Below the pieces are notes generated by a model that was not told the DNA's origin, searched no databases, and saw only the letters and a list, made by a program, of their open reading frames with translations. A DNA stretch of 64,000 nucleotides, from positions 176,760 through 240,759 of IMG/VR virus record IMGVR_UViG_3300027782_000027. The stretch is one strand, 5' to 3'. Below are positions 7,871 to 60,795 of the stretch, piece by piece (the stretch's first letter is position 1; every line of letters starts with the position of its first letter). The translations under genes and the position numbers were made by a program.

Positions 7871-7882
7871 TAAGTATAAAAT

Positions 7883-8761: not shown

Positions 8762-8770
8762 TATAATAAT

Positions 8771-24049: not shown

Positions 24050-24050
24050 G

Positions 24051-24081
24051 TTTGGTAAATTAAAAAATTGTATTATCTTTG
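24051..24081 (+). promoter_or_regulatory. Bacteroidota-type promoter driving the sigma-factor operon
   Basis: TTTG-N19-TATCTTTG. Confidence 0.75.
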
Positions 24082-24088
24082 TAAGACT

Positions 24089-24643
24089 ATGATTATGAAT
24101 TATATATTATTTGCATTCGGGGAATATAAAGAAAACCCACAGGCCTTAAACCTTTTAACTGAAACGGTATCACAAATATCAAAAGGTGAGATAAAATTCC
24201 AACATGGAGACAGTGGTGTCATAATAACATTTGGCACGAAGTTGGATTGGGAAGATATAGACGACTATATGAAGAAAAATATTGTTAAATTAACAGCAAT
24301 GTATTTTGTTTTCCCTATTGAATCTGACATGATATATTCTATGGACGAAGATATTAAAAAACATTTGTTTGAAAACACTGACATTTTGACAGAAAATGAA
24401 GAATTAAATCAGACTAGATACGTAAGTGATAATACAGGAGTTCCTGAATTTTTTAGGGGTATCCATATTCACAAGGGTAGTCCTTTTGATGATATTCTTA
24501 AAATCCTTAATGAAGAAGTTATTCAAGATGTACCAGTTATGACACTTAATGATTTATTGGATAAGATAAAAGAAAAAGGTATAGATAGTTTGTCAGAAAT
24601 TCAATTAAAACAATTAGAAATTTACTCAAAACAAATAATATGA
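24089..24643 (+). CDS. Hypothetical protein
   Basis: ORF with C-terminal LNDLLDKIKEKGIDSL motif; ATG 24089 lies after the promoter. Confidence 0.7.
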   Translation: MIMNYILFAFGEYKENPQALNLLTETVSQISKGEIKFQHGDSGVIITFGTKLDWEDIDDYMKKNIVKLTAMYFVFPIESDMIYSMDEDIKKHLFENTDILTENEELNQTRYVSDNTGVPEFFRGIHIHKGSPFDDILKILNEEVIQDVPVMTLNDLLDKIKEKGIDSLSEIQLKQLEIYSKQII

Positions 24644-25440
24644 TGGAAAAAAACCAAGTTATCCCGATTAATCAAGACGAAGTACAAATCTACCTTAAAG
24701 AACTCAGACGTATTAAGGTAATGACTCCTGAAAGAGAAAGGGAACTGTCGGCTAAGATGCAAACCCCCGAAACGACTGATAGTGAAAAGGCACGTATCTG
24801 TAAAGAATTGTTAGAGGGTAACCTACGATTTGTTATCACTGTTGCTAAACAGTATCAGGGACAAGGTGTTGATTTCAGTGATTTAGTTGCTGAAGGGAAT
24901 ATCGGACTTATGAAGGCGATTAATAGTTTTGATTGGACAAAGAACCTTCGTTTCATATCGTATGCGGTGTGGTGGATTAGACAATCCATTCTACAGTCTT
25001 TGAATGAACACTCAAGAACAATCCGTATCCCTGTTAACGTTATCCAAGACCTATATAAAGAGAAGAAACGTACAGACAAGACGGGTGAAAGAATTGACGA
25101 TAGATTTGCTAATCTCCCATCAACAATTAACCTACAAACTCAGATTAATGAAGATGGTGATACGTTGATTGATTTAATTGTTAATAAGAATAGTGATATG
25201 CCTGATGAGGCATTTAATAATGGTGACCAACTTAAAGACGGATTGTTTGGTATTATGAATATACTAGATGAACGTGAAAGACAGATTATTGAAGACTATT
25301 ATGGTATCTCAGGTACCCCAAGAACACTTGAAGATATTGGTTCAGATTTCAGTTTAACTAAGGAAAGAGTAAGACAAATTAAGGAAAAAGCTCTTCGTAA
25401 GTTACGAAATGAAAGTGTTACCTTGTTCGATTATATGTAA
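24640..25440 (+). CDS. RNA polymerase sigma70-family factor (RpoD/RpoS-like, no region 1.1)
   Basis: YLKELRR, NLRFVITVAKQY, DLVAEGNIGL, FISYAVWWIRQSI, TLEDIG..LTKERVRQIKEKALRKLR. Confidence 0.95.
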   Translation: MMEKNQVIPINQDEVQIYLKELRRIKVMTPERERELSAKMQTPETTDSEKARICKELLEGNLRFVITVAKQYQGQGVDFSDLVAEGNIGLMKAINSFDWTKNLRFISYAVWWIRQSILQSLNEHSRTIRIPVNVIQDLYKEKKRTDKTGERIDDRFANLPSTINLQTQINEDGDTLIDLIVNKNSDMPDEAFNNGDQLKDGLFGIMNILDERERQIIEDYYGISGTPRTLEDIGSDFSLTKERVRQIKEKALRKLRNESVTLFDYM

Positions 25441-37150: not shown

Positions 37151-37770
37151 TAGTTGGATTCAATGAATATAAACACAAGTATCAATTTAATGTTACAGGT
37201 GTAATTCATGTTGGGGCTCATGTTGGTCAAGAATATAATCAATATATTGAAACATTTGGTTTAATCTCTACATATTGGTTTGAACCAATACCACATGTTT
37301 ATAAAGAACTATCAAAAAATTTAGATGGGAAACCTAACACATTTTATTATAATGTTGCGATAGGTGAAAAAATTGGTATACATAAAATGTATCTTGATGA
37401 TGGTAACGGACAACAAAGTTCATCGTTATTAAAACCAAAAGAACATCAAAATTTTTATCCCCATATCAAATTTAGTGAAGAAAACACTATTAATATTACC
37501 TTGAATACATTAGATTTTTATGGTATAGATAGTTGTAATGTTTTAGTTTTAGATACTCAGGGGTATGAGTTAAATGCTCTTAAGGGTTCAATTAATACCT
37601 TAAAGAATATTGATTATATATTCACAGAATTTAATGTTATTGAAATGTATGATGGTTGTCCATCAATTGAACAACTTGATGAGTTTTTACAACCTTTTGG
37701 TTTTTACAGACAAGAAACATGGAATGTTGATGGAGTATGGGGTGATGCATTTTACTTAAAAAAAATATGA
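37147..37770 (+). CDS. FkbM-family methyltransferase
   Basis: IHVGAHVGQE, FEP, LDTQGYELNALKG. Confidence 0.85.
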   Translation: MIVGFNEYKHKYQFNVTGVIHVGAHVGQEYNQYIETFGLISTYWFEPIPHVYKELSKNLDGKPNTFYYNVAIGEKIGIHKMYLDDGNGQQSSSLLKPKEHQNFYPHIKFSEENTINITLNTLDFYGIDSCNVLVLDTQGYELNALKGSINTLKNIDYIFTEFNVIEMYDGCPSIEQLDEFLQPFGFYRQETWNVDGVWGDAFYLKKI

Positions 37771-38354
37771 TTAAAAAAGCTTTTATCGGTAATGGGGGAC
37801 ATTTGAGAGAGGTAATCGCTCATACAAATTATGATGTTATTAGATTTGTTGAAGACGAGTATTTCAAGGGGGAATATAATACATTCCCACTATCACAATT
37901 CAATTCAAAAGAATACACGATTATGATTGCAATTGCTGATAGTCAAGTTAGGTCAAGAATTCAAAAATCATTACCTGAAGACACTAAATATTTTTCATTC
38001 ATTGACCCATCTGCAATTTTAATGGATAGAAATATTGTAATCGGTGATGGTTCATTTATTGGTGCTAATTGTGTTATAACTACTAATGTGAAGATTGGTA
38101 ATCATTCTATTTTAAATAGAAATGTAAATATTGGACATGACGTGGTAATAGGTGATTGTTTTAGTGCTATGGCTGGTTCTGTGGTATCAGGGAACGTCTC
38201 AATTGGTAATAATTGTTATATGGGTAACAATTCATCAATACGTGAAAAAACAACCATTTGTGATGATGTGGTAATTGGAATGAATGGAAGTGTTGTTAAG
38301 AATATTGATAAACCTGGAACTTATGTTGGAGTTCCTGTTAATAAAATTAAATAA
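37767..38354 (+). CDS. Sugar acetyltransferase (PglD/NeuD-like, hexapeptide repeats)
   Basis: GNGGH, IAIAD, IGHDVVIGD, YVGVP. Confidence 0.9.
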   Translation: MIKKAFIGNGGHLREVIAHTNYDVIRFVEDEYFKGEYNTFPLSQFNSKEYTIMIAIADSQVRSRIQKSLPEDTKYFSFIDPSAILMDRNIVIGDGSFIGANCVITTNVKIGNHSILNRNVNIGHDVVIGDCFSAMAGSVVSGNVSIGNNCYMGNNSSIREKTTICDDVVIGMNGSVVKNIDKPGTYVGVPVNKIK

Positions 38355-40087
38355 TGGAAAAATTACTTTCGGTTATAGTATCGGCATATAATTTTGAAAA
38401 ATACCTTGAAGAGTGTATAGATTCAATTTATAACCAAAAAATTACCTACGGATATGAGGTAATTGTTAGAGATGATTGTTCAAAAGATAATACTAAAGAT
38501 GTTTTAGTTAAATTAAAAGAAAAATACCCTGATTTAAGAGTATTAAATGGGGATGTTAATTTGGGAGCATTAGAAAATATAAGAACTTTATTAAACTCTT
38601 GCACGACAAAATATATTGCGTATATTGATGGTGATGATTATTTTGACAATTATACAATTTTAAATGAAGAGGTTGAATTTTTAGAGAATAGCCCAAATTA
38701 TAGTATGGTATGTACAGGAACAAGATATTTGTACCCTGACGGGACAAAAATACCAACAGTACCTGAGTTATTTATTAGTTCATTCCTTGATGATGTTACA
38801 ACAGATGATTTACTCACAATCAATCATGCTTCTTTCTCAAGGGTGTTTAGAAACATACCAAATTTAATAAAAAATTATTTTAAAAATTTACCTTATGTTG
38901 ATTGGCCACTTAACTACGAAATTAGTAAACATGGTTTAATTAAATGTATTCATAAATGTGGAGGCATTTATAGAATATCTAATGACGGTATGTTTTCAAA
39001 TGTATCTGAAGAGGAAAAAAACAAACAAAATTTAATTGTTATCAATGAACTTAAACGACAAAGTATTAAAGATAAGTTTAAAACAATAACCATAGTTGAT
39101 TGTTTTATACACAATCAAAATGTTTTAAATAAATTAGAATTATGTATTAATAATTTAAAAAAATATAATCACACAATACTTTTAGTATCTAATACAATTG
39201 TTCCTGAACATATAATAAAAAATGTTGATTATCATCTATATAATTCTAATAATATTCTTTTTGAGGGTGAGTATACTAATTCAGAACCAGTTATTTTTTG
39301 GAAAAATCTTGATGGATTAACAGTACATGAAGTTATAAATACAATACAGAAACATGGATTACCCGTTATGGTTAATTTATTTAATTCATTAGACTTATGT
39401 AAATCACTTGGGTTTACACACTTCCAAAGAATTGAAGTTGATGATTTGTATAGTGAGAAAGGTTATGAATATATAATAACTGTTCCTTTAATTTGTTCTG
39501 AAAAAAATAAAAAGGGAATGTTTTATTTTAATGAGGGTAGAGATGTCTCGTTCCATTATTTTTATAGTGAGATAGATTATTTCCTACAGATAATTAATAG
39601 GGTTAGTTGTGAAGAAGATTATAAAAATTATTTAGTAAATCACGGATATGGTACTGATTTTATAAATGTTGAAAAATATCTATATGATAACATAAACAGA
39701 AATGATTATGGTTTATTAATAAGGAAAAATGGTGAGGAGGAAATGAATTTTGATTTCCAGGGGACTTTATGGAATACAGAAACTACAGGTAGTAATATAT
39801 CGTCTAAATTTAGAGGATGTTCAACAAAACTTTATAATATACCGGGACAAGAGTCTACGATGTTGTTGTCTTACAACCACAACAATTTTAAATCTGAAAG
39901 AAAGATAGTTGTTAATTTTTTAGATGGTAATACTGAAACTTATTATCATAGTTTGGAAAATTATGGTCATTGGTCTTTTAATATTTTAAATAATGTTGAA
40001 AAAATATTAGTTTATGATAACCAAAACGATGAATTTTTGTATGAAATTATAAACCAAAATGTTCTTGATTATATTATTTTTTCATGA
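38354..40087 (+). CDS. GT2 glycosyltransferase with additional C-terminal domain
   Basis: SVIVSAYN, DDCSKD, YIAYIDGDDY. Confidence 0.85.
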   Translation: MEKLLSVIVSAYNFEKYLEECIDSIYNQKITYGYEVIVRDDCSKDNTKDVLVKLKEKYPDLRVLNGDVNLGALENIRTLLNSCTTKYIAYIDGDDYFDNYTILNEEVEFLENSPNYSMVCTGTRYLYPDGTKIPTVPELFISSFLDDVTTDDLLTINHASFSRVFRNIPNLIKNYFKNLPYVDWPLNYEISKHGLIKCIHKCGGIYRISNDGMFSNVSEEEKNKQNLIVINELKRQSIKDKFKTITIVDCFIHNQNVLNKLELCINNLKKYNHTILLVSNTIVPEHIIKNVDYHLYNSNNILFEGEYTNSEPVIFWKNLDGLTVHEVINTIQKHGLPVMVNLFNSLDLCKSLGFTHFQRIEVDDLYSEKGYEYIITVPLICSEKNKKGMFYFNEGRDVSFHYFYSEIDYFLQIINRVSCEEDYKNYLVNHGYGTDFINVEKYLYDNINRNDYGLLIRKNGEEEMNFDFQGTLWNTETTGSNISSKFRGCSTKLYNIPGQESTMLLSYNHNNFKSERKIVVNFLDGNTETYYHSLENYGHWSFNILNNVEKILVYDNQNDEFLYEIINQNVLDYIIFS

Positions 40088-40851
40088 TTGGATTAACAAT
40101 AACAACTTGTAAAAGAATTGATTTGTTTGAAAAAACAATACTAACATTTGTGAACGAATGTGAAGATTGTAATTTAATTGATATAATAATTCATTATGAT
40201 GATTCTTCATCTTTGGAAGATAGAGATAAGATGTTTTCATTATTGAATAGATTATTTCCCGATACTCTAATAGTCTCTAAAAGATTTAATCCAAATTCGT
40301 TTAACACTAATAGAAGACATTTAGAGATAATGAAAAAATGGAAAGAAGATATTAAATTTTTTAATATTGATTATGTTTTTCATTTAGAAGATGATTGGTT
40401 ATTTGAAAACAAATTTAGTATCCAAGAAGGTGTTGAATTGTTAAAAAATAATAATGAAATTGCTATGGTTGGATTTTCATGGAAAAAAAAGATATTCCCT
40501 AAAGAATTATTTGAACCAAGAATTATTGGTAATTTTTGGGAGTGGTATTATTCTGAAAAACATTACTTGAATGAACCTTTGTTTAATGATACGGTTGAAG
40601 AAACTTTACACGAAGTTAAGGGTTTATGGATTAAATATATTAACTGGCCTTACTTTGGATTTAGACCGGCAATTCATGATGTGAATAAATTAAATGAGAT
40701 TGAAACGTTTAATAATAATATGGATTCTTTTGAATTAGAATTTGCAATAAGATTTGCAAAAAAATTCAAATCTTTTTTACATTTAGAAAGAATTTGTTAT
40801 CATATTGGAGATGATAATTCATCATATAATTTAAATAACTCTTTAAGATAA
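40084..40851 (+). CDS. GT-A fold glycosyltransferase
   Basis: ITTCKR, YDDSS, YVFHLEDDW, YHIG. Confidence 0.75.
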   Translation: MIGLTITTCKRIDLFEKTILTFVNECEDCNLIDIIIHYDDSSSLEDRDKMFSLLNRLFPDTLIVSKRFNPNSFNTNRRHLEIMKKWKEDIKFFNIDYVFHLEDDWLFENKFSIQEGVELLKNNNEIAMVGFSWKKKIFPKELFEPRIIGNFWEWYYSEKHYLNEPLFNDTVEETLHEVKGLWIKYINWPYFGFRPAIHDVNKLNEIETFNNNMDSFELEFAIRFAKKFKSFLHLERICYHIGDDNSSYNLNNSLR

Positions 40852-41423
40852 TGGATTATAACTTTTTATGGGTTCCAAAAACTACTTATCACAGGTCAGC
40901 ACAAAGTCAATTTGTTGTTGATGTCTTTCCAAAGGTATTAAAAAACTTTGAATTAATAATTGAAATTGGTACATTCACAGGTGCCTTTACTTTATGGTTG
41001 TCTGAGAATAAATCTGATAATTGTAAAATAATTTCTTATGATATTAATCCTGATTATTGTGAAGTTAATAATCTTAAACATACTGAATTAAGAATTGGCG
41101 ACTGTTTTGATATTGATGTCATAAAAGATATTTGTGATTTAATTAAAAATTCAGGTAGAACACTTTTTTTATGTGACGGGGGGGATAAAGAACTTGAGTT
41201 TAGATTGTATTCAAAGTATCTAAAAACAAACGATGTTATTATGCTTCATGATTATTCACATAGTGAAGAGGAATATAATATTATTAAAGAAAAAATAAAT
41301 TGGCCAACAAATTCAGAATCACACTATAAAAATATTGAAAGATACTTACCTGAACTTAATTTAACTACATTTATGTATGATGATTTTAAACAAGTTTTAT
41401 GGGGTTCGTTTATAAAAAATTGA
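40851..41423 (+). CDS. SAM-dependent methyltransferase (CmcI/Methyltransf_24-like)
   Basis: IIEIGTFTG, SYDI, CDGG, MLHD. Confidence 0.75.
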   Translation: MDYNFLWVPKTTYHRSAQSQFVVDVFPKVLKNFELIIEIGTFTGAFTLWLSENKSDNCKIISYDINPDYCEVNNLKHTELRIGDCFDIDVIKDICDLIKNSGRTLFLCDGGDKELEFRLYSKYLKTNDVIMLHDYSHSEEEYNIIKEKINWPTNSESHYKNIERYLPELNLTTFMYDDFKQVLWGSFIKN

Positions 41424-41424
41424 T

Positions 41425-42144
41425 ATGAATTATAAGATTAAATTAGTTCATTTACAGACAACACAGAATGAACATAGAGAAAAACTATCACGAAAATCTA
41501 TACAACAAGTAATACCTTACGGTATTGAATATGTTTTACATCAGAACGAGTTATATACTTCCTTACCTCCAGTTCATACAAGTGTTAGACCACATAATGT
41601 TAGAATCGGTAAGTATGAAGATATTAATGACCCTGAATATGGGAACGCATTAACTCCGGCTCACTACGGATGTTTTGAGGCGTTTAAAATTGGTATCCTA
41701 TCAGAATTTGATAATGATTTGGACTTCTTAATTGTTTGTGAAGGTGATTGTATAATAGAAGTTCCGATAGAAGAATTTATTGATAAAGTTAATCATGTCT
41801 GTGGTATTGTTAATCAGGAAGATATTTCTTATTTTTCGTTTGGTGATACTAAAACTTTAGATTATGGGTGGCATCAATCTGACGTTGTTAGAGAAATACC
41901 GAACCAAGATTTATTGTTTATTACTAATAAAATAATTGGTTTACAGTGTATTATGTTTTCAAAAAAATCACGTAAAACAATTATGAGCCAGTTGAGAACA
42001 CATAGATGGGATTGTGCTGATACATTTTTTAATATAATATGTGCAGAACAGAGATTAACTATGGGTGTTTTAAAGAAAAGAATAACAACTCAGGTAGATG
42101 GGGAATCATTCATAGATAAAGAATATAAAGTTTTTACAAAATAA
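41425..42144 (+). CDS. GT25-like glycosyltransferase
   Basis: HYGCFEAF, LIVCEGDC. Confidence 0.55.
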   Translation: MNYKIKLVHLQTTQNEHREKLSRKSIQQVIPYGIEYVLHQNELYTSLPPVHTSVRPHNVRIGKYEDINDPEYGNALTPAHYGCFEAFKIGILSEFDNDLDFLIVCEGDCIIEVPIEEFIDKVNHVCGIVNQEDISYFSFGDTKTLDYGWHQSDVVREIPNQDLLFITNKIIGLQCIMFSKKSRKTIMSQLRTHRWDCADTFFNIICAEQRLTMGVLKKRITTQVDGESFIDKEYKVFTK

Positions 42145-42145
42145 T

Positions 42146-42691
42146 ATGGCACACGAACAACAGAAGAATTTTTTTAAAAGAGTTAAAGAAAAATACCCAA
42201 AATATTTCACAGATGTAAAAGTTTTAGATATCGGTTCTTTGGATATAAATGGGTCAGTAAGAGATTTATTTGATTACCCATTTTATTACGTTGGATTAGA
42301 TTTGGCACCTGGAAAAAATGTTGATGTAATTTGTCCTGGACATTTATATGATTGTGGATTTCAGTTTGATGTTGTTTCATCGGGTGAATGTTTTGAACAT
42401 GATATGTATTACGCAAGAACTATACAGAATATGGTTAAACTTCTTAAGTCTGGTGGTTTAATGGTTTTTACTTGTGCGTCAACAGGGAGACATGAACATG
42501 GTACATTAAGAACTACTCCTGATAACGCACCTTTCTTGGGTGATATTAGTGAAAAGTGGGCAAATTACTATAAGAATTTAACTGAAGATGATATTAGGTC
42601 AGTTATTGATGTTAATGATATTTTTAATAACTTTGGATTTGAATATGAACCAGTAACTTGTGATTTATATTTTTGGGGGATTAAAAAATGA
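42146..42691 (+). CDS. Class I SAM-dependent methyltransferase
   Basis: VLDIGSLDING, FDVVSSGECFEHD, LKSGG. Confidence 0.85.
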   Translation: MAHEQQKNFFKRVKEKYPKYFTDVKVLDIGSLDINGSVRDLFDYPFYYVGLDLAPGKNVDVICPGHLYDCGFQFDVVSSGECFEHDMYYARTIQNMVKLLKSGGLMVFTCASTGRHEHGTLRTTPDNAPFLGDISEKWANYYKNLTEDDIRSVIDVNDIFNNFGFEYEPVTCDLYFWGIKK

Positions 42692-43383
42692 TTGATGTTG
42701 ATGTTATTTGTCTTACTAATACAACTTCCGATGAATTATATTGGATGACAAGACGAACATTAACAACTATACACGATTCTGAAAAAGAGTATAAATTTCA
42801 TGTTCACTTAATTGAGACTAATTCCCAAAGTAATTATGATTTTTCAGATATTGTTGAAAATTATGTAAAACCAAATGAAAAATTTAATTACAATAGATTT
42901 TTAAATCATTCTTATCCTTATGTAAAACATAAATGGGTTTTAATTACTAACAATGATGTAAGATATGAAAGAGGTTGGTTTTCAAAGATAATCGAGGTTT
43001 ACAACAAAAGACCTGATGTTGAATCTTTTTCACCTAAATGTCCGATACTTTATTCAAAATATTTTTTTAATGATTTTTTAGGTGGTGATTTAGATTTTCA
43101 TGAAAGTGTTGGGACTAGTGTTCACTTAATGGGTTGGTCATTAGTTATGAAAAAAAGAGTTTTTGACATTGTTTATCCGTGGGATGAAAACTTTGATATG
43201 TACTACCAAGATAATGATTATGCTGAAATTTTATTAAAAAATAATATTAAACACGGTTTGGTTAGGGACTCAATTGCAACTCATTTAGAATCACAAACTA
43301 TAAAATATAAATTTAATTCAAATACAATTGATAATCTTAGAGTGAAAAATTATTTTTACAATAAATGGGGAAAAGAAATTTAA
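42688..43383 (+). CDS. GT2-family glycosyltransferase
   Basis: FNYNRFLN, ITNNDV, WDENFDMYYQDND. Confidence 0.8.
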   Translation: MIDVDVICLTNTTSDELYWMTRRTLTTIHDSEKEYKFHVHLIETNSQSNYDFSDIVENYVKPNEKFNYNRFLNHSYPYVKHKWVLITNNDVRYERGWFSKIIEVYNKRPDVESFSPKCPILYSKYFFNDFLGGDLDFHESVGTSVHLMGWSLVMKKRVFDIVYPWDENFDMYYQDNDYAEILLKNNIKHGLVRDSIATHLESQTIKYKFNSNTIDNLRVKNYFYNKWGKEI

Positions 43384-43384
43384 T

Positions 43385-45517
43385 ATGAAAATTACACAAG
43401 TAACACCAGGAATAATTACGATACCACCAAACGGTTGGGGGGCGGTTGAAAAGGTAATATGGGAATATTACAACAACATTAAAGAATTAGGTCACGAATG
43501 TGATATAAAGTATCTTAACGATATTGATATTAATAATAGTGATATTGTTCATATTCATATGGCTAATTTGGCAATTGATGCCGCTAATAAAGGAATACCA
43601 TATATTTTTTCATTACATGACCACCACGTTGTTTATTATGGTAAAGATTCATCTAACTACCAACAAAATTTAGATGCAATTAAAAGGTCTGTGGTATCAT
43701 TTACACATGCTGAGTTTTTAGTTGATTACTTTGATGAAACAGACAAGTTATTCTACCTATCACATGGTGTTAATACAGAGTTCTTTAAGAATGACAAACC
43801 GAAAAGAACGGAACACAAATTATTGTGTTTAGCAAACAATGGTATTGGTGGTGATTCAACACATGACAGGAAAGGATTTAGATATGCAATTGAGGCGGCA
43901 ATTAAATTAGATTTACCCATTACAGTTGCCGGTCCTGAAAACAATAGAATATTCTTTGAACATCATAATGACTTATTGAATTATGATAAGTTAACATTAA
44001 TGTTTTCAAATCCAAACGAAGAACAGATATTAGAACTATATAAAAGTCATTCTATATTCTTACACCCTTCTATGTTAGAAGCGGGACATCCGAACCTAAC
44101 ATTACTTGAGGCGGTGTCTTGTAACATGCCGGTTGTTGGTACTTACTTAGGTTCACAAACGATAGAAGGGATGGTAGTGGTTGAAAGAGATGTAAATCAA
44201 ATTGTTACTGGTATTAAACAAGTTATTGATAATTATGATTTATATCTAAGTAACACTGAATTAGATAGACAAAAATACGATTGGAGTGTTATTACCAAAA
44301 GAATGGTTAGAATCTATGAGGACCTTATTAATAGTAGAAAAAATTTGAATAGTCTTGAAACTAAACAAAGATTTGATAAAGTATTTGAAAATACTGAAAT
44401 AAAACCAAAAGATATGGTTGAAAAAATTGAAGTGATTAATCACTACATCAACGGAGCGTTAGTTGAAATTAAAGGTAATACTGATAAGAAATATTTAGTT
44501 GAGTTTTGGAATCAGAATAGTGACTGCGAATATCGTGAGGAGATTGGGTGTAATATGTGGGTTAGATTGAATAAAAAGTATTTTGATGAGTATACTTTAA
44601 AAATTTACTCTGAAGGTAATTTAATTAGTGAAAAGAAATATGATGCTGAAAATAAACGAGTATACATTGCATTAGATTCAAAATCATTGGGTGATACATT
44701 TGCTTGGGTACCATATGCCGAAGAATTCAGAAAGAAACACAACTGTAAGGTTATATGTTCAACGTTCTTTAACGATTTGTTTGTAAAACAATATCCTGAG
44801 ATACAATTTGTTTCACCTGGTAGTACGGTTCATAATCTATATGCAATGTATGAGATAGGTTGGTTCTACGATGGAGATAATGTTAAAATGGATAGACACC
44901 CAAGTGATTTCAAATTAGGTCCATTACAAAAAACCGCAACAGACATTTTAGGTTTGGAATATAAAGAAGTTAAACCTTTAATCAAAAATCCAAACAAGAT
45001 AAAGAAAAAACGAGTTGGACTGGGTATTCACTCAACGGCTCAATCAAAGTATTGGAATAATCCAAAGGGTTGGCGAGATATTACTGATTATCTAATATCT
45101 CTTGGGTATGAGGTGATTATCTATTCAAAAGAGGAAGATGGGTATATGGGTAATTTTTATCCAAAAGGCGCTAAACAAAACCCTCCTGGTTCAATCTACA
45201 AACTTATAGAAGAGTTATCAACTTGTGAATTCTTTATAGGTATATCAAGTGGTATTTCATGGGTTACTTGGGCATTGGATATCCCAACAGTTTTGATTTC
45301 AGGATTTACTGAAGAGTTTAACGAACCTTATGATAATGTATATAAGGTAAGTGCTCCTGAAAATACTTGCAGAGGATGTGCTAATAAATTTAGATTAGAC
45401 CCAGGTGATTGGAATTGGTGTCCAATAAATAAGGGGAATGATAAGATGTTTGAATGTTCTAAAAAGATAACATCTGAGATGGTAAAAGATAAAATTATTG
45501 AATTACTTGGTAAGTAA
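43385..45517 (+). CDS. GT4 fused to Aah/TibC-like autotransporter O-heptosyltransferase domain
   Basis: PPNGWGAVE, EAGHPNLTLLEA; SLGDTFAW, HSTAQSKYWNNPKGW, FIGISSGISW, ISGFT, CRGC..DWNWCP..FECSKKIT. Confidence 0.85.
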   Translation: MKITQVTPGIITIPPNGWGAVEKVIWEYYNNIKELGHECDIKYLNDIDINNSDIVHIHMANLAIDAANKGIPYIFSLHDHHVVYYGKDSSNYQQNLDAIKRSVVSFTHAEFLVDYFDETDKLFYLSHGVNTEFFKNDKPKRTEHKLLCLANNGIGGDSTHDRKGFRYAIEAAIKLDLPITVAGPENNRIFFEHHNDLLNYDKLTLMFSNPNEEQILELYKSHSIFLHPSMLEAGHPNLTLLEAVSCNMPVVGTYLGSQTIEGMVVVERDVNQIVTGIKQVIDNYDLYLSNTELDRQKYDWSVITKRMVRIYEDLINSRKNLNSLETKQRFDKVFENTEIKPKDMVEKIEVINHYINGALVEIKGNTDKKYLVEFWNQNSDCEYREEIGCNMWVRLNKKYFDEYTLKIYSEGNLISEKKYDAENKRVYIALDSKSLGDTFAWVPYAEEFRKKHNCKVICSTFFNDLFVKQYPEIQFVSPGSTVHNLYAMYEIGWFYDGDNVKMDRHPSDFKLGPLQKTATDILGLEYKEVKPLIKNPNKIKKKRVGLGIHSTAQSKYWNNPKGWRDITDYLISLGYEVIIYSKEEDGYMGNFYPKGAKQNPPGSIYKLIEELSTCEFFIGISSGISWVTWALDIPTVLISGFTEEFNEPYDNVYKVSAPENTCRGCANKFRLDPGDWNWCPINKGNDKMFECSKKITSEMVKDKIIELLGK

Positions 45518-51797: not shown

Positions 51798-52103
51798 ATG
51801 GAACAATTAACAAGTAGTCAGATACAAGAAAAGATTAACAACGGGGAAGATTTTATATTAAAGATGCATGCCACATGGTGTGGTCCCTGTAAACAATTAA
51901 CTGAAGAACTAAAGAAAATTACAACTGATGTGTCAATCTATGAGTTTGACGTTGAGAGTGATATTAATTTCTCAAAGAGTTTGGGGGTTAGAAATGTACC
52001 TGTATTAAAATTTTATAAAGAAGGTGTTGATACTCATACAATGGTTGGTTTAAAACCTGCTCAGACTGTATCATCACTAATCCTTGAACACATTAATAAC
52101 TAA
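51798..52103 (+). CDS. Thioredoxin
   Basis: ATWCGPCK, VRNVP. Confidence 0.9.
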   Translation: MEQLTSSQIQEKINNGEDFILKMHATWCGPCKQLTEELKKITTDVSIYEFDVESDINFSKSLGVRNVPVLKFYKEGVDTHTMVGLKPAQTVSSLILEHINN

Positions 52104-52375
52104 TGAGTAAGTTATTGGTAGCGTATACGATGAAAGGGTGCCATTGGTGTACAGAGTTTAAAAAACAACTTAAAGAAAACAAGATTAAGTTTAAGGAACG
52201 AGACATTGAAAAATACGAAGAGGAGTATAACCTTTTTGTAGAAGTGACTGGTAACGATTTTGTTCCGGCATTTATGATTGTTGATACTATAACAGAAGAT
52301 GCTAAGTTGTTCGCACCCGACAGAGATTTTCAGGATATCAACGAAGCTGTTGGAATTATCAAAAATATTTTGTAG
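52103..52375 (+). CDS. Glutaredoxin-like protein
   Basis: YTMKGCHWC, FVPAF. Confidence 0.85.
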   Translation: MSKLLVAYTMKGCHWCTEFKKQLKENKIKFKERDIEKYEEEYNLFVEVTGNDFVPAFMIVDTITEDAKLFAPDRDFQDINEAVGIIKNIL

Positions 52376-52377
52376 TT
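52334..52377 (+). repeat. 44-bp direct repeat, copy 1 (3' end of glutaredoxin gene)
   Basis: gatatcaacgaagctgttggaattatcaaaaatattttgtagtt. Confidence 0.9.
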
Positions 52378-52399
52378 GTGTAATTTTTTCTTATCTTTG
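52369..52399 (+). promoter_or_regulatory. Bacteroidota-type promoter of the R-M cassette
   Basis: TTTG-N19-TATCTTTG, ATG 4 nt downstream. Confidence 0.75.
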
Positions 52400-52403
52400 T
52401 GGT

Positions 52404-53030
52404 ATGGGAAAAATTAACACAATTAAAAAGAAAGATATCATACCATTTCATAATGAATTAAACACAGTTGTTGAAGAATATTGTGATAGAGCTTGGGAGT
52501 CTAATGAAGGTGGGAAGAGAAGAAAAATTATGGGAGACCTTGGAGAAGAGATATCTCAAAGAATATTTGAATATTGTATTAATATTTTAAATATTAAAAA
52601 CACGAGAGTTTATAAAGGGTGTGAGAAAAAAATTATGTGTAAAATAGATAATAACGCATATTTTCAGGCTCAAGTTGATAAGCACATTGAAATTAAAAAT
52701 AATTTAAGAATTATTTGCGAAGCTAAAACTTATTTGGATAAAACTTATGTCGAAAGAGCTAGTAGTGATTTTAGTATAATTAGAAAATATAATACGATAG
52801 GTGATAAGAAAATTTTTAGTTATATTATTTCCTTACAAGACTGTGTTAAAAAAGAAACATTATCTTTTTTTATGAGAGATGGTCATATTGATAATGTATT
52901 TATTCTTATGGATTTAAAACGAAATGGAACTAAACCAATATGGAATCCTAATTTTAGAAAAACAATTAATCTTGATAAACTTTATAATTGTATTTATATT
53001 ATAACAAATAACTTATTAGATGGAATCTAA
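52404..53030 (+). CDS. Putative PD-(D/E)XK type II restriction endonuclease
   Basis: GDLGE, QVDKH...ICEAKTYLDK; overlaps an MTase gene; true start ATG 52404. Confidence 0.6.
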   Translation: MGKINTIKKKDIIPFHNELNTVVEEYCDRAWESNEGGKRRKIMGDLGEEISQRIFEYCINILNIKNTRVYKGCEKKIMCKIDNNAYFQAQVDKHIEIKNNLRIICEAKTYLDKTYVERASSDFSIIRKYNTIGDKKIFSYIISLQDCVKKETLSFFMRDGHIDNVFILMDLKRNGTKPIWNPNFRKTINLDKLYNCIYIITNNLLDGI

Positions 53031-53787
53031 ATTAATATTAGGAGAATGTATTGAGGAAATGAAAAAATTAGAAAAAGAATCTATTGATATGATTCTTTGT
53101 GATTTACCATATGGTACAACACAGTGTAGTTGGGATAGTGTAATTCCGTTTAAAGATTTGTGGGAACAATATGAAAGAATTATAAAACCAAATGGTGCAA
53201 TTGTTTTAACTGCTGCTCAACCTTTTACCTCTAATTTGGTTATGTCTAACACCAAATTATTTAGATATTCTTTAGTTTGGGAAAAATCTAAATCCACAGG
53301 GTATTTGAATAGTAAGAAAATGCCAATGAGAGCCCATGAGGATGTGTTAGTTTTTTATAAAAAATTACCAACTTATAACCCTCAAAAGGTACAAGGGACC
53401 CCTTATGATAAAGGTATTGCTCATAGACCAACAGAAGTTTATCGAGAACAAAAAGGTGAGATACATGTTAAAAATGAAAACGGATTAAGATATCCTAGGT
53501 CGGTACAATACTTTAAAACCGCAGAATCTGAAGGTAAAGTATATCACCCAACACAAAAACCAATTTCAATGTTCGAATGGTTGATTAAAACATATTCAAA
53601 TGAGGGTGATGTGATATTAGATAATTGTTTAGGCGCTGGTACAACGGCAATTGCTGCAATAAGAACTAATCGAAAATATATTGGTATTGAGATTAGTGAA
53701 GAATATTACAATATATCACTTGAAAGATTAAATAATGAAACAAAAGACATCAACAAAGCTGTTGGAATTATCAAAAATATTTTGTAG
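53020..53787 (+). CDS. N4-C/N6-A DNA methyltransferase (beta class)
   Basis: CDLPYG, HPTQKP, VILDNCLGAGTT, YIGIE. Confidence 0.9.
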   Translation: MESKLILGECIEEMKKLEKESIDMILCDLPYGTTQCSWDSVIPFKDLWEQYERIIKPNGAIVLTAAQPFTSNLVMSNTKLFRYSLVWEKSKSTGYLNSKKMPMRAHEDVLVFYKKLPTYNPQKVQGTPYDKGIAHRPTEVYREQKGEIHVKNENGLRYPRSVQYFKTAESEGKVYHPTQKPISMFEWLIKTYSNEGDVILDNCLGAGTTAIAAIRTNRKYIGIEISEEYYNISLERLNNETKDINKAVGIIKNIL

Positions 53788-53789
53788 TT
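53746..53789 (+). repeat. 44-bp direct repeat, copy 2 (3' end of MTase gene)
   Basis: gacatcaacaaagctgttggaattatcaaaaatattttgtagtt; 2 mismatches to copy 1. Confidence 0.9.
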
Positions 53790-53796
53790 TTGTTCC

Positions 53797-54324
53797 ATGA
53801 AGGAACTAACATTTAAAAAGAAAGGGGTAGTTCATACCCCTTTGACATTTTGGCAAGTTGACCCAACATCGAAGATTGCTATCTACCAAGGTGGAAGAGG
53901 GGCTCGTCCTGATTTGGATTTTATTGTAAAACATAAGGAAGAAGGTAAGAGATTACGTACACCGTCACATACACATTGGATTGTTGATTTGATTGCCAAG
54001 AAACAATGTGCTCCGAATGTTATTAAAGGGTTTATTGATGACCTGATAAAAATCTATGATGAAACTGAACCATTTAATTGTGAGACATCAAGAGATACCT
54101 ACCAATTACAGTATGTTAATAAACTCACATCAAAGTATCTTGCGTTACAAGGATGTGGTTATTATTCCGTTGAAGTTTTAATTTCTTTTGTTGAGTTGTT
54201 CTCCAAGTGTGAAAAACAAACACCAGGAGCGTTCATGTTTAGAAACCTATTGGTGATGGTTAAGGGGTATATTGACGGTGATAGAGACTTCTATCAAATC
54301 GTAGGTTACTCTAAACGTGTTTAA
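53797..54324 (+). CDS. Hypothetical protein
   Basis: TTG-N20-TAGTTTTG promoter 4 nt upstream; RLRTPSHTHWIVDL. Confidence 0.7.
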   Translation: MKELTFKKKGVVHTPLTFWQVDPTSKIAIYQGGRGARPDLDFIVKHKEEGKRLRTPSHTHWIVDLIAKKQCAPNVIKGFIDDLIKIYDETEPFNCETSRDTYQLQYVNKLTSKYLALQGCGYYSVEVLISFVELFSKCEKQTPGAFMFRNLLVMVKGYIDGDRDFYQIVGYSKRV

Positions 54325-58871: not shown

Positions 58872-59076
58872 TCACCCATCACATTATGGTGGTGAAGATA
58901 ATCCATATGAAGCAATCAAAGTCATTGATGAGTGGAATTTAGGATTTTGTCTTGGGAATACAGTTAAATATATCTCAAGAGCGGGTAAAAAAAATAAAGA
59001 AAAAGAATTGGAAGATTTAGAAAAAGCTCTGTGGTATCTACAATATTATGTAAATCAAAAAAAATATGAAAAGTAA
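58846..59076 (+). CDS. DUF3310 family protein
   Basis: VNHPSHY, GFCLGNTVKYISRAGKK, EDLEKALWYL. Confidence 0.85.
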   Translation: MSEQKEMVNHPSHYGGEDNPYEAIKVIDEWNLGFCLGNTVKYISRAGKKNKEKELEDLEKALWYLQYYVNQKKYEK

Positions 59077-59941
59077 AATTACTGTTATTGGTATATCATC
59101 TGATAACATTGAAAATGTATTTAATGGTTGGGAATATACTTACATAGTTAAAGATTTATTAGCGAATTTTGAAGTTGACCTAAAGTTAATTTCAGATAAA
59201 TTAGATTTGTTTTGTGACAATTGTTTAATAATTTATTCATGTGATGAAAGAAATATTCCTGATAATTTACTTGAATATTTTACTGAGTATAAAAATAGAA
59301 ATCTTGATTTTAATCTTTTTCACATATCAAACGAACAACTAAGACATGATACAAGTTATTATAAATTGGCTAAAAATGTTTTTAGAAATTATTTTGACCC
59401 GTCAATAACTTTAAATAATGTTTTAACTTTACCTTTAGGTTATAAAAATGGGTTTTTTAATCCGAGTTTAACATTTAAAAAAATTGAAGATAAAAAATTT
59501 GATAGTTGTTTTGTTGGACAATTAAAACACGATAGAATTAATGTTGTTCACGAAATTAGTAATTTAGATAAAAAATTTATACACATTACACAACAATGGG
59601 ATTGTCCAACATCTCTCCCTTCGGAAGCAGTTTTTAAGATTTATCAAGATACTCTTTTAATTCCGTGTCCAATTGGTAATGTTAATCAAGACTCGTTCAG
59701 AATTTGTGAGATTTTGGAATCCGGCTCAATACCTTTAATTAAAATTTATTTCCAAGAAGATTATTTTAAACATATTTTTGGAGAACACCCAATACCAACT
59801 GTTAGAGATTGGAATGAAATACCTAAAATATTAAAAGATATTAAAAATAATAGTAACGAAAAAATTTTAGAAATTAATGAGTGGTATAAAAAATTCAAAG
59901 AAGAACTAAGAACTAAAATTTTTAATATATTAAATAAATGA
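59066..59941 (+). CDS. Exostosin/GT47-like glycosyltransferase
   Basis: LPLGY, FVGQ, PCPIGNVNQDSFRICEILESGSIP. Confidence 0.65.
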   Translation: MKSKITVIGISSDNIENVFNGWEYTYIVKDLLANFEVDLKLISDKLDLFCDNCLIIYSCDERNIPDNLLEYFTEYKNRNLDFNLFHISNEQLRHDTSYYKLAKNVFRNYFDPSITLNNVLTLPLGYKNGFFNPSLTFKKIEDKKFDSCFVGQLKHDRINVVHEISNLDKKFIHITQQWDCPTSLPSEAVFKIYQDTLLIPCPIGNVNQDSFRICEILESGSIPLIKIYFQEDYFKHIFGEHPIPTVRDWNEIPKILKDIKNNSNEKILEINEWYKKFKEELRTKIFNILNK

Positions 59942-60795
59942 TAGAAAATTATATTAACAAAGTCCTTAATGGTGATACCATTGACGTGATGAGCGAAATG
60001 CCCGAAGGATGGGTTGACCTAGTTGTTACATCGCCTCCATATAATGTGGGTATCCAATACGACACACATAACGATGAGATTGTTATGGATGAATATTGGG
60101 AGTGGTCTGAAAAATGGTTGACAGAAGTATACCGTCTACTTAAAGACGATGGAAGAATTGCTATTAACATACCATATGAGGTGAATGTACAAGCCCGTGG
60201 TGGTAGAGTATTCTTCGCTTCAGAAATATATCAGGTGATGAAAAAAGTTGGGTTTAAGTTCTACGGTATTGTTGACCTTGAAGAAGACTCACCACATAGA
60301 AGTAAGACAACTGCTTGGGGTTCTTGGATGAGTCCATCATCTCCTTACATTTACAACCCAAAAGAATGTGTCATCTTGGCTTATAAAAAAGTTCACATCA
60401 AGAAAGTTAAGGGTGAACCACAATGGAAAGGTGAACCTTATCTAACTGAAGAGGGGAAGAACAAAGTTGCTTATTCTGAACAAGATAAGAAAGAGTTTAT
60501 GGAATTGGTGTTTGGACAATGGAAATACTTTGCCGATACCCGTTCATTAACAAAGGCGACGTTCTCCATGGATATTCCCGAAAAGGCAATCAAGATATTG
60601 TCATACAGAAATGATGTGGTATTAGACCCCTTTAATGGTTCAGGTACCAGTTGTGTGGCAGCAGTTGTTCATGACAGACGATGGGTTGGTATTGAATTAA
60701 GTGAAAACTATTGTGAAATTGCTAAACAACGAATACAAAGTTTTGTTGACCAAAAGAGCCAACAGAAGTTACAATTTGAAAACGGAGTCCAATAA
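59938..60795 (+). CDS. N4-C/N6-A DNA methyltransferase (beta class)
   Basis: VTSPPYN, VLDPFNGSGTS, VGIEL. Confidence 0.9.
   Translation: MIENYINKVLNGDTIDVMSEMPEGWVDLVVTSPPYNVGIQYDTHNDEIVMDEYWEWSEKWLTEVYRLLKDDGRIAINIPYEVNVQARGGRVFFASEIYQVMKKVGFKFYGIVDLEEDSPHRSKTTAWGSWMSPSSPYIYNPKECVILAYKKVHIKKVKGEPQWKGEPYLTEEGKNKVAYSEQDKKEFMELVFGQWKYFADTRSLTKATFSMDIPEKAIKILSYRNDVVLDPFNGSGTSCVAAVVHDRRWVGIELSENYCEIAKQRIQSFVDQKSQQKLQFENGVQ

What the first reader, a model, noticed from the sequence alone, without database searches (positions are those of the whole stretch)
52334..53792. R-M cassette flanked by 44-bp direct repeats that supply promoter parts and a shared C-terminus
Seen: glutaredoxin ends DINEAVGIIKNIL and the MTase ends DINKAVGIIKNIL because the same 44 bp (34 bp perfect core) flank the 1.4-kb endonuclease+MTase pair. 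Copy 1 provides the TTTG -33 box of the cassette promoter. Copy 2 provides the MTase stop and most of the promoter of the next gene. No integrase or transposase is present. Established: R-M genes inserting with long target duplications are described in bacteria. Inference: a recent, excisable or amplifiable selfish cassette in a phage, possibly for host DNA degradation or competitor exclusion.
Basis: partly seen in the sequence, partly recalled or inferred. Interest (0 to 1): 0.65.

Follow-up and report, generated by a model that had tools for sequence, protein, structure and literature searches.

The report
Restriction-modification cassette inserted in jumbo phage
One strain of an uncultured freshwater jumbo phage has picked up a two-gene restriction-modification module between two tightly packed genes, duplicating about 45 bases of the target in the way already described for such modules in bacteria; about 50 related phage contigs still show the empty site.

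Summary
A 48-nt direct repeat (3 mismatches, 34-nt perfect core, only two copies in the 240-kb genome) flanks a 1.36-kb insert between glutaredoxin and ORF175.

About 50 related IMG/VR contigs have the empty site, with the Grx stop 9-15 nt before the ORF175 ATG. Only this strain is occupied: the window plus two identical contigs, and unitigs from four lake studies.

The insert holds two genes:
- ORF208, whose AlphaFold model (pLDDT 92) matches type II restriction endonucleases (BbvCI Z 14.9), with invariant D/E/K.
- An overlapping beta-class N6-adenine methyltransferase.

The same pair sits elsewhere in related phages (93% DNA identity at best). There the methyltransferase is 242 aa with its own stop and terminator. 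Here the stop is lost exactly after codon 242, and translation runs into the duplicated Grx tail.

The left copy supplies a TTTG that, with the cassette's own TATCTTTG box, forms a Bacteroidota-type promoter.

This meets every published criterion for R-M "insertion with long target duplication", so it is a new member of a known kind, now in a phage. Excision, amplification, enzyme activity and specificity remain untested.

A sibling phage carries a different R-M-like cassette at the same junction.

The parts
51798..52103 (+). Thioredoxin gene. It belongs to the conserved block orf561-orf113-Trx-Grx-ORF175.
   Evidence: PF00085 at 1.5e-15. Synteny is conserved in about 50 contigs.
52103..52375 (+). 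Glutaredoxin-like gene (90 aa). It is intact, and its last 39 coding nt plus stop lie in the left repeat copy.
   Evidence: PF00462 at 2e-8 and NCBIfam glutaredoxin-like families. The tail matches that of empty-site relatives.
52334..52381 (+). Left copy of the duplicated target (48 nt; perfect core 52344-52377). It holds the Grx C-terminus, the TAG stop (52373-52375) and the TTTG at 52369-52372.
52369..52399 (+). Putative hybrid promoter for ORF208. The TTTG (-33-like) comes from the duplicated target; 19 nt further on, TATCTTTG (-7-like, 52392-52399) comes from the cassette. The ATG follows 4 nt later.
   Evidence: The pattern TTTG-N17-21-TAnnTTTG occurs 13 times against 4.7 +/- 2.0 in shuffles, and this is one of the matches. 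The TATCTTTG..ATG geometry is shared with the L152 copy of the cassette. Promoter function is inferred.
52385..53745 (+). The inserted DNA proper: 1361 bp, 93% identical to the cassette in an unrelated genomic context (L152). Its composition is low in GC (27.8%; GC3 16-20% against 25-37% in the flanks).
   Evidence: blastn limits and composition; composition profile.
52404..53030 (+). ORF208, a candidate type II restriction endonuclease of PD-(D/E)xK type. D92, E106 and K108 are invariant in 18 homologues. It has no Pfam or NCBIfam family.
   Evidence: AlphaFold2 pLDDT 92.2. Foldseek: BbvCI at 1.5e-6. VIA: BbvCI Z 14.9 over 187 aa, NucC 13.8, and SgrAI, NgoMIV, Bse634I, PspGI and Cfr10I at 10.5-11.9. 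Invariant columns. dN/dS 0.13-0.25.
53020..53787 (+). Beta-class N6_N4 DNA methyltransferase (255 aa). It overlaps ORF208 by 11 nt. Residues 1-242 are native; residues 243-255 and the stop come from the duplicated Grx tail.
   Evidence: PF01555 at 5.6e-29. Closest solved relatives are M.MboIIA, M.RsrI and CcrM. Native 242-aa versions end ...NNETK-stop. dN/dS 0.04-0.06.
53746..53793 (+). Right copy of the duplicated target (perfect core 53756-53789). It provides 13 codons and the TAG stop to the methyltransferase, and keeps the region upstream of ORF175, including TAGTTTTG (53785-53792).
53797..54324 (+). ORF175, a conserved gene of unknown function directly downstream of the insertion site. 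In other phage lineages it borders a hypervariable island.

Best explanation
**What it is.** A compact two-gene module circulates among uncultured, low-GC freshwater jumbo phages. It consists of a restriction-endonuclease-fold nuclease (ORF208) translationally coupled to a beta-class adenine methyltransferase.

**How it got here.** In one strain it entered the 9-bp spacer between glutaredoxin and ORF175 by illegitimate recombination, with at most about 5 nt of microhomology (TAGTT) at the left joint. The re-entry point on the recipient lay about 45 nt upstream of the exit point, so about 45 nt of target was duplicated. A template switch, or joining to two sister copies during recombination-dependent replication, would both do this. 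No integrase or transposase took part.

**What the duplication does.**
- Left copy: it keeps glutaredoxin intact. It also places a TTTG 19 nt upstream of the cassette's own TATCTTTG box, making a Bacteroidota-type promoter.
- Right copy: it gives the methyltransferase 13 extra codons and a stop, replacing the stop codon and terminator it lost. It also preserves the sequence upstream of ORF175.

**Likely function.** Progeny DNA is methylated. On the next infection the nuclease cuts DNA that lacks the mark, either the host chromosome or co-infecting cassette-free relatives.

**Shown:** the anatomy, the empty sites, the foreign origin of the cassette, the exact right joint, the nuclease fold, the methyltransferase family, and purifying selection on both genes.

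**Inferred:** the recombination mechanism, promoter use, enzymatic activity and specificity, and the biological role.
For: - **Repeat.** It is real and unique in the genome.
- **Empty sites.** 28 close relatives (ORF175 at least 95% aa identical) and some 20 more distant ones have the Grx stop 9-15 nt from the ORF175 ATG, in the same orf561-orf113-Trx-Grx-ORF175 block. The occupied allele is confined to one strain. The outgroups are empty, so insertion is the derived state.
- **Same cassette elsewhere, without these repeats.** It occurs in other contexts (L152, L153-155, L165-169), and homology to the window runs exactly over 52385-53745.
- **Right joint.** The native methyltransferase is 242 aa with TAA and a hairpin terminator. 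In the window the joint lies directly after codon 242.
- **Composition.** The cassette's GC3 is 16-20%, against 25-37% in the flanks.
- **Nuclease.** The fold matches type II REases at Z 10-15 over about 85% of the protein, and D92, E106 and K108 are invariant.
- **Methyltransferase.** PF01555 and adenine-specific structural relatives.
- **Selection.** Both genes are under purifying selection, with broadly matching dS.
- **Mobility genes.** No integrase is found in 240 kb.
- **Promoter.** The motif is enriched in the window and present at 52369-52399.
- **Precedent.** Published criteria and near-identical bacterial cases exist: 46-bp duplications that overlap a gene's 3' end, with low-GC inserts (PMC2853133).
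Against: - Neither gene has been assayed, and the recognition sequence is unknown.
- ORF208 relatives at 70% identity sit without the adjacent methyltransferase (L156-159). Distant homologues in cyanophage S-CAM1 are solitary. The nuclease therefore need not be strictly paired with this methyltransferase.
- The real donor was not sampled. The best match is 93% identical, so the left joint is known only to within a few bases and the TAGTT microhomology may be coincidence.
- The mismatches sit at the outer ends of the repeat. That also fits integration of a circle carrying a diverged copy of the target.
- Promoter assignments rest on a consensus only, and the host is unknown.
Confidence: 0.75

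Rival explanations
1. The cassette arrived by Campbell-type homologous integration of a small circle. The circle would have been excised earlier from another occupied genome by recombination between the repeats, so it already carried one diverged copy of the 45-nt Grx tail. This is the mini-circle route described for T4-type phages.
For: The three mismatches sit exactly at the outer ends of a perfect core. The left copy equals the target on its left side, and the right copy equals the target on its right side. A crossover inside the core would produce that pattern. The k=31 unitig graph is equally compatible with a 1412-bp circle. PeSL mini-circles are documented in T4-type phages (PMC2839356).
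Against: It explains only spread between genomes, not the origin of the duplication. None of 69 related loci has a Grx tail with the right copy's variant (GAC..AAA). No circle or tandem junction occurs in viral contigs. Cassette and flank depths are equal in the source run. The repeat is a unique coding tail, not a repeated regulatory motif.
Confidence: 0.1
2. The pair is not a cognate restriction-modification system. ORF208 would be a stand-alone nuclease (host-DNA degradation, a NucC-like effector or a recombination function). The methyltransferase would be an independent anti-restriction methylase that merely travels with it.
For: ORF206 (70% identical) lies alone between the SbcC-like gene and DUF6576 in L156-159. 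Cyanophage homologues are solitary. NucC, which is not a restriction enzyme, is the second-best structural match at Z 13.8. The genome has another methyltransferase of the same family that is a core gene.
Against: In at least eight independent contexts the two genes are adjacent with overlapping stop and start. Their dS values are similar in three of five comparisons and about twofold lower for ORF208 in the other two. The best fold matches are type IIP, IIF and IIT restriction enzymes over nearly the whole length. The solitary copies lie 1.4 kb from four tandem C5 methyltransferases, which could protect instead.
Confidence: 0.2
3. The occupied state is ancestral. The many empty sites would then be scar-less deletions by recombination between the direct repeats.
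For: Recombination between 34-48-nt repeats would regenerate exactly the observed empty sequence.
Against: Empty sites with the same tight junction extend to relatives with only 44-60% identical Grx and different tail sequences. The methyltransferase tail is plainly derived from Grx, and native versions end at residue 242. The cassette's composition is foreign. Only one clonal strain is occupied.
Confidence: 0.04
4. It is an assembly artefact: a cassette from another genome was threaded through a shared 34-mer.
For: k=31 unitigs end inside the core on both sides, so short-k graphs are ambiguous.
Against: Three separate assemblies give the same structure. The right copy has its own variant, joined in frame to methyltransferase codon 242, and the gene has no other stop. 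Cassettes elsewhere lack the 34-mer. Depths are equal across the joints.
Confidence: 0.02

Closest known systems
R-M gene complexes inserted with a long target duplication (Nobusato et al. 2000; Furuta et al. 2010, PMC2853133)
   Same: R and M genes alone are in the insert, with no mobility gene. The duplication is over 30 bp, of a sequence that is unique in the genome and single-copy at an empty site in a relative. The repeat overlaps the 3' end of the upstream gene, and the insert is lower in GC. The Haemophilus influenzae cases have 46-bp repeats with 44/46 identity between copies, almost the same figures as here.
   Different: The recipient is a jumbo phage genome, not a bacterial chromosome, and the donors are also phages. 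The methyltransferase lost its own stop and is fused in frame to the duplicated coding tail. The duplicated target appears to contribute a promoter element.
PeSL-mediated modular shuffling and mini-circles in T4-type phages (Arbiol et al. 2010, PMC2839356)
   Same: Small accessory gene modules are swapped in and out of hyperplastic regions of large virulent phages. Direct repeats flank a module and could release a circle.
   Different: PeSLs are promoter-plus-stem-loop motifs repeated many times per genome. Here the repeat is a unique coding tail present exactly twice, it has no stem-loop, and it was created by the insertion itself.
Virus-encoded R-M systems of chloroviruses (Van Etten et al. 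2019, PMC7019647)
   Same: A lytic large DNA virus carries adjacent methyltransferase and site-specific endonuclease genes. The proposed role is degradation of unmethylated host DNA while the virus's own DNA is protected.
   Different: The host there is eukaryotic, the endonucleases are packaged in virions, and the enzyme families are unrelated. Nothing is known here about packaging or timing.
Type II restriction endonucleases of the BbvCI, NgoMIV, SgrAI, Cfr10I, Bse634I and PspGI fold group
   Same: The predicted fold of ORF208 superposes on them at Z 10.5-14.9 over 165-188 of 208 residues, with a D...ExK catalytic motif.
   Different: Sequence identity is only 10-13%, there is no Pfam or NCBIfam hit, and the recognition site and oligomeric state are unknown. 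NucC (CBASS effector) scores almost as well.
Allelic substitution of different R-M systems at one chromosomal locus (hsd-type cassette variation; Furuta et al. 2010)
   Same: A sibling phage (L101, L029) carries a different R-M-like set at the very same Grx|ORF175 junction: a 212-aa ORF, a ResIII/DEAD helicase, an Eco57I-type methyltransferase and a 140-aa ORF.
   Different: That insert has no long flanking duplication. It replaces the last approximately 25 nt of Grx and the spacer.

Membership tests
R-M insertion with long target duplication (criteria of Furuta et al. 2010) | Both an R-gene and an M-gene homologue lie inside the inserted sequence | tested here: met
   ORF208 has a REase fold. 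The methyltransferase is PF01555. Both lie within 52385-53745.
R-M insertion with long target duplication (criteria of Furuta et al. 2010) | The insert is shorter than 20 kb and has no mobility genes | tested here: met
   The insert is 1.36 kb with two ORFs only. No PF00589 integrase is found in the whole contig.
R-M insertion with long target duplication (criteria of Furuta et al. 2010) | A direct repeat over 30 bp aligns with a single-copy sequence at an empty site in a related genome | tested here: met
   The repeat is 44-48 nt. The empty site is single-copy in about 50 related contigs.
R-M insertion with long target duplication (criteria of Furuta et al. 2010) | The repeat is unique in the genome, so it is not an IS end, an att site or a dispersed repeat | tested here: met
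   There are exactly two matches in 240,759 bp with up to 3 mismatches allowed.
Type II restriction-modification system | Separate, adjacent endonuclease and methyltransferase genes | tested here: met
   The genes overlap by 11 nt. The same arrangement occurs in at least eight other contigs.
Type II restriction-modification system | The endonuclease has a PD-(D/E)xK (or other nuclease) catalytic core | tested here: met
   D92, E106 and K108 are invariant, on a REase fold at Z 14.9.
Type II restriction-modification system | The two enzymes recognise the same DNA sequence, and methylation blocks cleavage | not testable with these tools
   This needs an expression or cleavage assay and a methylome. 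Solitary ORF208 relatives leave it open.
PeSL regulatory cassettes of T4-type phages | A conserved promoter-plus-stem-loop motif repeated at many sites in hyperplastic regions | tested here: not met
   There are only two copies in the genome. No terminator-like hairpin lies in or beside the repeat.
Transposon, IS or integrase-borne island | A transposase or integrase gene, terminal inverted repeats, and a short fixed-length target duplication | tested here: not met
   There is no such gene. No inverted repeats lie at the ends. The duplication is 44-48 nt.
Pfam or NCBIfam restriction-endonuclease families | A significant profile match | tested here: not met
   ORF208 has no Pfam or NCBIfam hit. 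The only hit is PHROG 10849, of unknown function, at 3.6e-13. It has a REase fold but belongs to no named family.

The most novel reading that the evidence does not exclude
The cassette behaves as a selfish, homing-like element within a phage population. In mixed infections its endonuclease would cut cassette-free sibling genomes that were not pre-methylated. Recombination-dependent repair from the occupied genome, or re-integration of a circle released through the 34-48-nt repeats, would then copy the cassette into the Grx|ORF175 junction. That junction, and the SbcC-sigma island in the sister lineage, would be arenas where rival R-M cassettes displace one another. The long target duplication itself would be a by-product of endonuclease-induced breaks processed by the phage's recombination machinery.
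Probability: 0.12. Interest if true: 0.75.

Novelty: new member of a known kind. Interest (0 to 1): 0.45.

Why it matters
This moves a mobility mode known only from bacterial chromosomes into a virulent-type jumbo phage. The mode is R-M genes inserting on their own with a long target duplication.

The data set is unusually complete for a natural case:
- the occupied allele;
- dozens of natural empty sites;
- donor-like copies that fix one joint to the base.

The duplication also looks functional rather than a mere scar. It rescues the upstream gene, gives a stop codon to a truncated methyltransferase, and appears to complete a promoter.

The work flags a phage-restricted restriction-endonuclease-fold family that has no database family. 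It shows that one intergenic junction in these phages hosts alternative R-M-like cassettes, which is relevant to phage-phage competition and to how phages acquire epigenetic marks.

It does not overturn any current view.

Tried and rejected
**Searches that found nothing useful**
- Near-identity and protein searches of cultured phage records: nothing for the region, ORF175 or Grx. Only distant methyltransferase hits and about 30% identical ORF208 hits in cyanophages.
- ORF208 against PDB sequences: nothing. The fold search was needed.
- ORF208 profile against 185,579 species genomes by pattern scan: no relative. This is a weak negative, because the scan is pattern-based.
- ORF175 function: no Pfam, NCBIfam or PHROG hit, nothing usable in the Atlas, and a confident fold with no PDB match (Foldseek E > 0.6; best VIA Z 6.1).

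**Tests of excision or amplification that were uninformative**
- Only Logan unitigs (k=31) were available. They end inside the 34-nt core, so a same-strain empty allele or a circle has no diagnostic 31-mer. No joints were reported, and depths were about equal.
- An exact-pattern scan for a strain-type empty junction in metagenome contigs gave 0 hits. The positive control for the occupied junction found only the window's own contig, so the zero means little.
- The circle or tandem junction pattern gave 0 hits in viral contigs.

**Ideas rejected**
- A co-transferred recombination tract next to the insert: identity to the nearest empty relatives is a flat 92-97% on both sides.
- A specific functional link between ORF175 and R-M genes. 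Across lineages its upstream neighbours also include DnaJ, SprT-like, T5orf172, DUF723, Pyr_excise, dCMP deaminase and PNKP phosphatase genes. It borders a generally plastic region.
- Long flanking repeats around the alternative 3.75-kb insert in L101: none.

**Not attempted**
Full report
**Setting.** The window is bases 176,760-240,759 of a 240,759-bp IMG/VR viral contig with an estimated completeness of 82%. The genome is about 31% GC. It encodes its own sigma-70-family factor, an SbcC-like ATPase, thioredoxin, glutaredoxin, many glycosyltransferases and two N6_N4 DNA methyltransferases. No tyrosine integrase is detectable. It has no close cultured relative. It belongs to a large group of lake-water phage contigs.

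**1.
- Window 52334-52381 and 53746-53793 are a 48-nt direct repeat with three mismatches, at repeat positions 3, 10 and 45.
- The 34-nt perfect core lies at 52344-52377 and 53756-53789, and the copies are 1412 nt apart.
- The core occurs exactly twice in the whole contig, even with three mismatches allowed.
- No other gene-flanking repeat of this sort exists in the window.
- Because the repeat covers the last 39 coding bases and the TAG of glutaredoxin, Grx (52103-52375) and the methyltransferase (53020-53787) end in near-identical 13-residue tails.

**2. It is an insertion, and the empty site exists.**
- ORF175 and Grx each retrieved about 70-80 related IMG/VR loci.
- In 28 contigs of close relatives (ORF175 at least 95% identical), the Grx stop is followed by a 9-nt spacer and the ORF175 ATG. 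This is exactly what is obtained by removing one repeat copy and everything between the copies.
- About 20 more distant relatives (Grx down to 44% identical) keep the block orf561-orf113-Trx-Grx-ORF175 with a 9-15-nt junction.
- Two more distant contigs have Trx rather than Grx directly upstream of ORF175.
- The occupied arrangement occurs only in the window and in two other contigs that are 100% identical over the region (L004/L072, L006/L073).
- A unitig covering 52348-53785 is present with 0-2 differences in four runs from four studies.
- The outgroups are empty, so the occupied state is derived.
- Identity between the window and its nearest empty relatives is a flat 92-97% on both sides of the site, with no sign of a co-transferred tract.

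**3. What was inserted.**

*ORF208 (52404-53030)*
- It has no Pfam or NCBIfam match.
- It has 44 homologue clusters at 45-90% identity in metagenomes, none with an informative annotation.
- An AlphaFold2 model built on 18 of them is confident (pLDDT 92.2, pTM 0.90).
- Foldseek puts BbvCI first (E 1.5e-6), followed by NucC and PspGI.
- VIA-align gives BbvCI Z 14.9 over 187 residues, NucC 13.8, and SgrAI, NgoMIV, Bse634I, PspGI and Cfr10I at 10.5-11.9.
- D92, E106 and K108 are invariant and form a D-x13-E-x-K motif.

*The methyltransferase*
- It starts 11 nt before the ORF208 stop.
- It is PF01555 (5.6e-29), and its closest solved relatives are the adenine-specific M.MboIIA, M.RsrI and CcrM.

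*Both genes*
- Both are under purifying selection against five other copies: dN/dS is 0.13-0.25 for ORF208 and 0.04-0.06 for the methyltransferase. dS values are similar in three of the five comparisons and about twofold lower for ORF208 in the other two.
- The insert is compositionally foreign. GC3 is 16% and 20%, against 25-37% in the neighbouring genes.

**4. Where it came from, and the exact joints.**
- The same pair occurs in other phage contigs in different surroundings. Mostly it lies in a variable island between an SbcC-like gene and a DUF6576-sigma-factor pair (L152, L165-169). It also lies between unrelated genes (L153-155).
- These phages are relatives of the window phage: the SbcC-like protein is 60% identical and the sigma factor 66%.
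- The window phage has the 'empty' form of that island, with SbcC-like at 21668-24049, then the DUF6576-like gene at 24068 and the sigma factor at 24640.
- The best copy (L152) is 93% identical to the window over exactly 52385-53745.
- In all of these copies the methyltransferase is 242-251 aa. In L152 it ends ...NNETK, then TAA and a GC-rich hairpin.
- In the window the sequence is collinear up to the AAA of codon 242 (53743-53745). It then continues directly with the right repeat copy. The stop codon and terminator are gone, and the right joint is therefore defined to the base.
- On the left, homology to L152 starts about 25 nt upstream of the ORF208 ATG and includes TATCTTTG-TGGT-ATG.
- The five bases before that (TAGTT, the Grx stop plus two) also precede the cassette in L152, where TAG is the stop of a different upstream gene. 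This is either short microhomology or coincidence.
- None of the other copies is flanked by the Grx-tail sequence. So the repeat is duplicated target, not part of the element.

**5. How it most likely happened (inferred).**
- The left joint on the recipient lies after TAGTT at about 52378. The right joint lies before GAY-ATC, the equivalent of 52334. That is about 45 nt upstream of the left joint.
- A single molecule cannot give this by two simple crossovers.
- Two routes can: a template switch out of and back into the recipient, or joining to two sister copies in a replicating concatemer. Both produce a duplication of exactly this kind without any dedicated recombinase.
- Two of the three mismatches are private to the right copy (GAT to GAC, synonymous; GAA to AAA, E to K). 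They lie in a part that now encodes only a dispensable methyltransferase tail.
- Those two mismatches fit in-situ drift over a time comparable with the approximately 5% divergence from the nearest empty relatives.
- They fit equally well a crossover inside the core with a circle carrying a diverged copy. I cannot separate these two readings.

**6. What the duplication does.**
- It leaves Grx intact.
- It supplies the methyltransferase with 13 codons and a stop. C-terminal length varies naturally in this family (242, 250 and 251 aa), so a tail is probably tolerated.
- It keeps the 45 nt upstream of ORF175, including TAGTTTTG four bases before the ATG. This matches the Bacteroidota -7 consensus TAnnTTTG.
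- More distant relatives have TATATTTG at the same place.
- The composite pattern TTTG-N17-21-TAnnTTTG is enriched in the window: 13 occurrences against 4.7 +/- 2.0, and 0 of 100 shuffles reach 13. One instance is 52369-52399, with the TTTG from the left repeat copy, a 19-nt spacer and TATCTTTG from the cassette.
- TAnnTTTG lies within 45 nt upstream of 7 of 63 genes, against about 2 expected.
It is weaker for ORF175, which has no canonical -33. None of it has been tested.

**7. Function (inferred).**
- The simplest reading is a type II R-M pair used offensively. Packaged DNA is pre-methylated, and the nuclease made after infection cuts unmethylated host DNA or cassette-free competitors. This is the role proposed for the chlorovirus R-M systems (PMC7019647).
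- There is a caveat. ORF208 relatives at 70% identity occur without the neighbouring methyltransferase, although 1.4 kb from four tandem C5 methyltransferases (L156-159).
- Homologues at 30% identity in cyanophage S-CAM1 are solitary.

**8. The site is a hot spot.**
- A sibling phage (L101 = L028, also L029; ORF175 97% identical) carries a different 3.75-kb insert at the same junction.
- That insert holds a 212-aa ORF, a ResIII/DEAD helicase, an Eco57I-type methyltransferase and a 140-aa ORF.
- It has its own terminator and promoter, and it replaces the last approximately 25 nt of Grx and the spacer, without a long duplication.
- In a distant relative, a 153-aa ORF plus an SPPY-type methyltransferase directly precede ORF175 (L057).
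- Across lineages the genes upstream of ORF175 also include homing-endonuclease-like and repair genes. The plasticity is therefore general, not R-M-specific.

**9. Comparison with what is known.**
- Furuta et al. 2010 (PMC2853133) define R-M 'insertion with long target duplication' by three criteria: R and M inside the insert, insert under 20 kb, and duplication over 30 bp matching an empty site.
- They describe Haemophilus cases with 46-bp unique repeats that overlap a gene's 3' end, 44/46 identity between the copies, and low-GC inserts.
- Every criterion is met here (see the membership test).
- What is new: the recipient and donors are phages, there is an in-frame fusion of the methyltransferase to the duplicated coding tail, the promoter is apparently hybrid, and the nuclease family is unnamed.
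- It is not a PeSL-type cassette. The repeat has two copies only and no stem-loop.
- It is not a transposon or an integrase-borne island.

**10. What remains open.**
- Excision, circles and amplification could not be tested. The only reads available were k=31 unitigs, which break inside the 34-nt core. The contig collections hold too few copies of this strain for a negative to count.
- Activity, specificity, promoter use and the host are unknown.

**Verdict.** This is a real, cleanly documented insertion of an R-M-like cassette with a 44-48-nt target duplication. It is a new member of a known kind and of moderate interest.

Noticed in passing
L101:4646-8376 (IMGVR_UViG_3300044846_002901; also L029): A sibling phage has a different 3.75-kb R-M-like insert at the same Grx|ORF175 junction. 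It holds a 212-aa ORF, a ResIII/DEAD helicase (500 aa), an Eco57I-type methyltransferase (379 aa) and a 140-aa ORF. It has no long flanking duplication.
   Followed up: partly
window 53797-54324 (ORF175): This 175-aa protein is highly conserved (55 invariant positions in 14 sequences down to 47% identity). Its model is confident (pLDDT 90): an N-terminal beta sheet plus a helical bundle. It has no family hit and no PDB fold match. In other lineages it borders a hypervariable island.
   Followed up: partly
L156:5001-10447 (also L157-159): An ORF208 homologue (70% identical) sits alone after the SbcC-like gene. It is followed by DUF6576, a sigma factor and four tandem C5 DNA methyltransferase genes.
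   Followed up: no
L057:3752-5009: In a distant relative, a 153-aa ORF with no family hit overlaps a 270-aa SPPY-motif N6_N4 methyltransferase directly upstream of the ORF175 homologue. This may be a third small R-M pair.
   Followed up: no
window 3-6326: A giant ORF, open at its 5' end (at least 2107 aa), is built almost entirely of degenerate 9-nt-periodic Ser/Gly-rich repeats. GC is locally much higher than in the rest of the window.
   Followed up: no
window 6974-9649: Three tandem paralogous genes of about 292-298 aa have glycine-rich repeats and similar N-terminal segments (72-nt repeat family, 69-78% identity).
   Followed up: no
window 14987-17437 (- strand): An 816-aa ORF contains long runs of 6/12/18-nt periodic GTTGGTGTT-like repeats.
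   Followed up: no
window 21668-25440: An SbcC/Rad50-like ATPase (793 aa) is followed by a DUF6576-like gene and a phage-encoded sigma-70-family factor. In sister lineages the gap between the first two is a variable island that holds the ORF208-methyltransferase pair, Pyr_excise, ORF175 and others.
   Followed up: partly
window 59066-60795: A second N6_N4 DNA methyltransferase (285 aa, 59938-60795) is conserved in relatives. It lies next to a gene with an RXYLT1-like glycosyltransferase C-terminal domain.
   Followed up: no
window 34550-45517: This is a cluster rich in glycosyltransferases (GT1, GT2, GT4, GT9). It includes an 866-aa fusion with FkbM methyltransferase and DegT aminotransferase domains.
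   Followed up: no
L030-L034 (e.g. L030:4652-5414): In one sub-lineage about 700 nt of extra sequence lies between orf113 and Trx, and Trx is only 77% identical while its neighbours are 92-97%. This is another local replacement hot spot.
   Followed up: no
window 52846 and 52829 (loose ends in runs X1 and X3): Contigs in the same lake samples match part of ORF208 at 97% or more and then diverge. Other alleles or contexts of the nuclease gene therefore co-occur with this strain.
   Followed up: no
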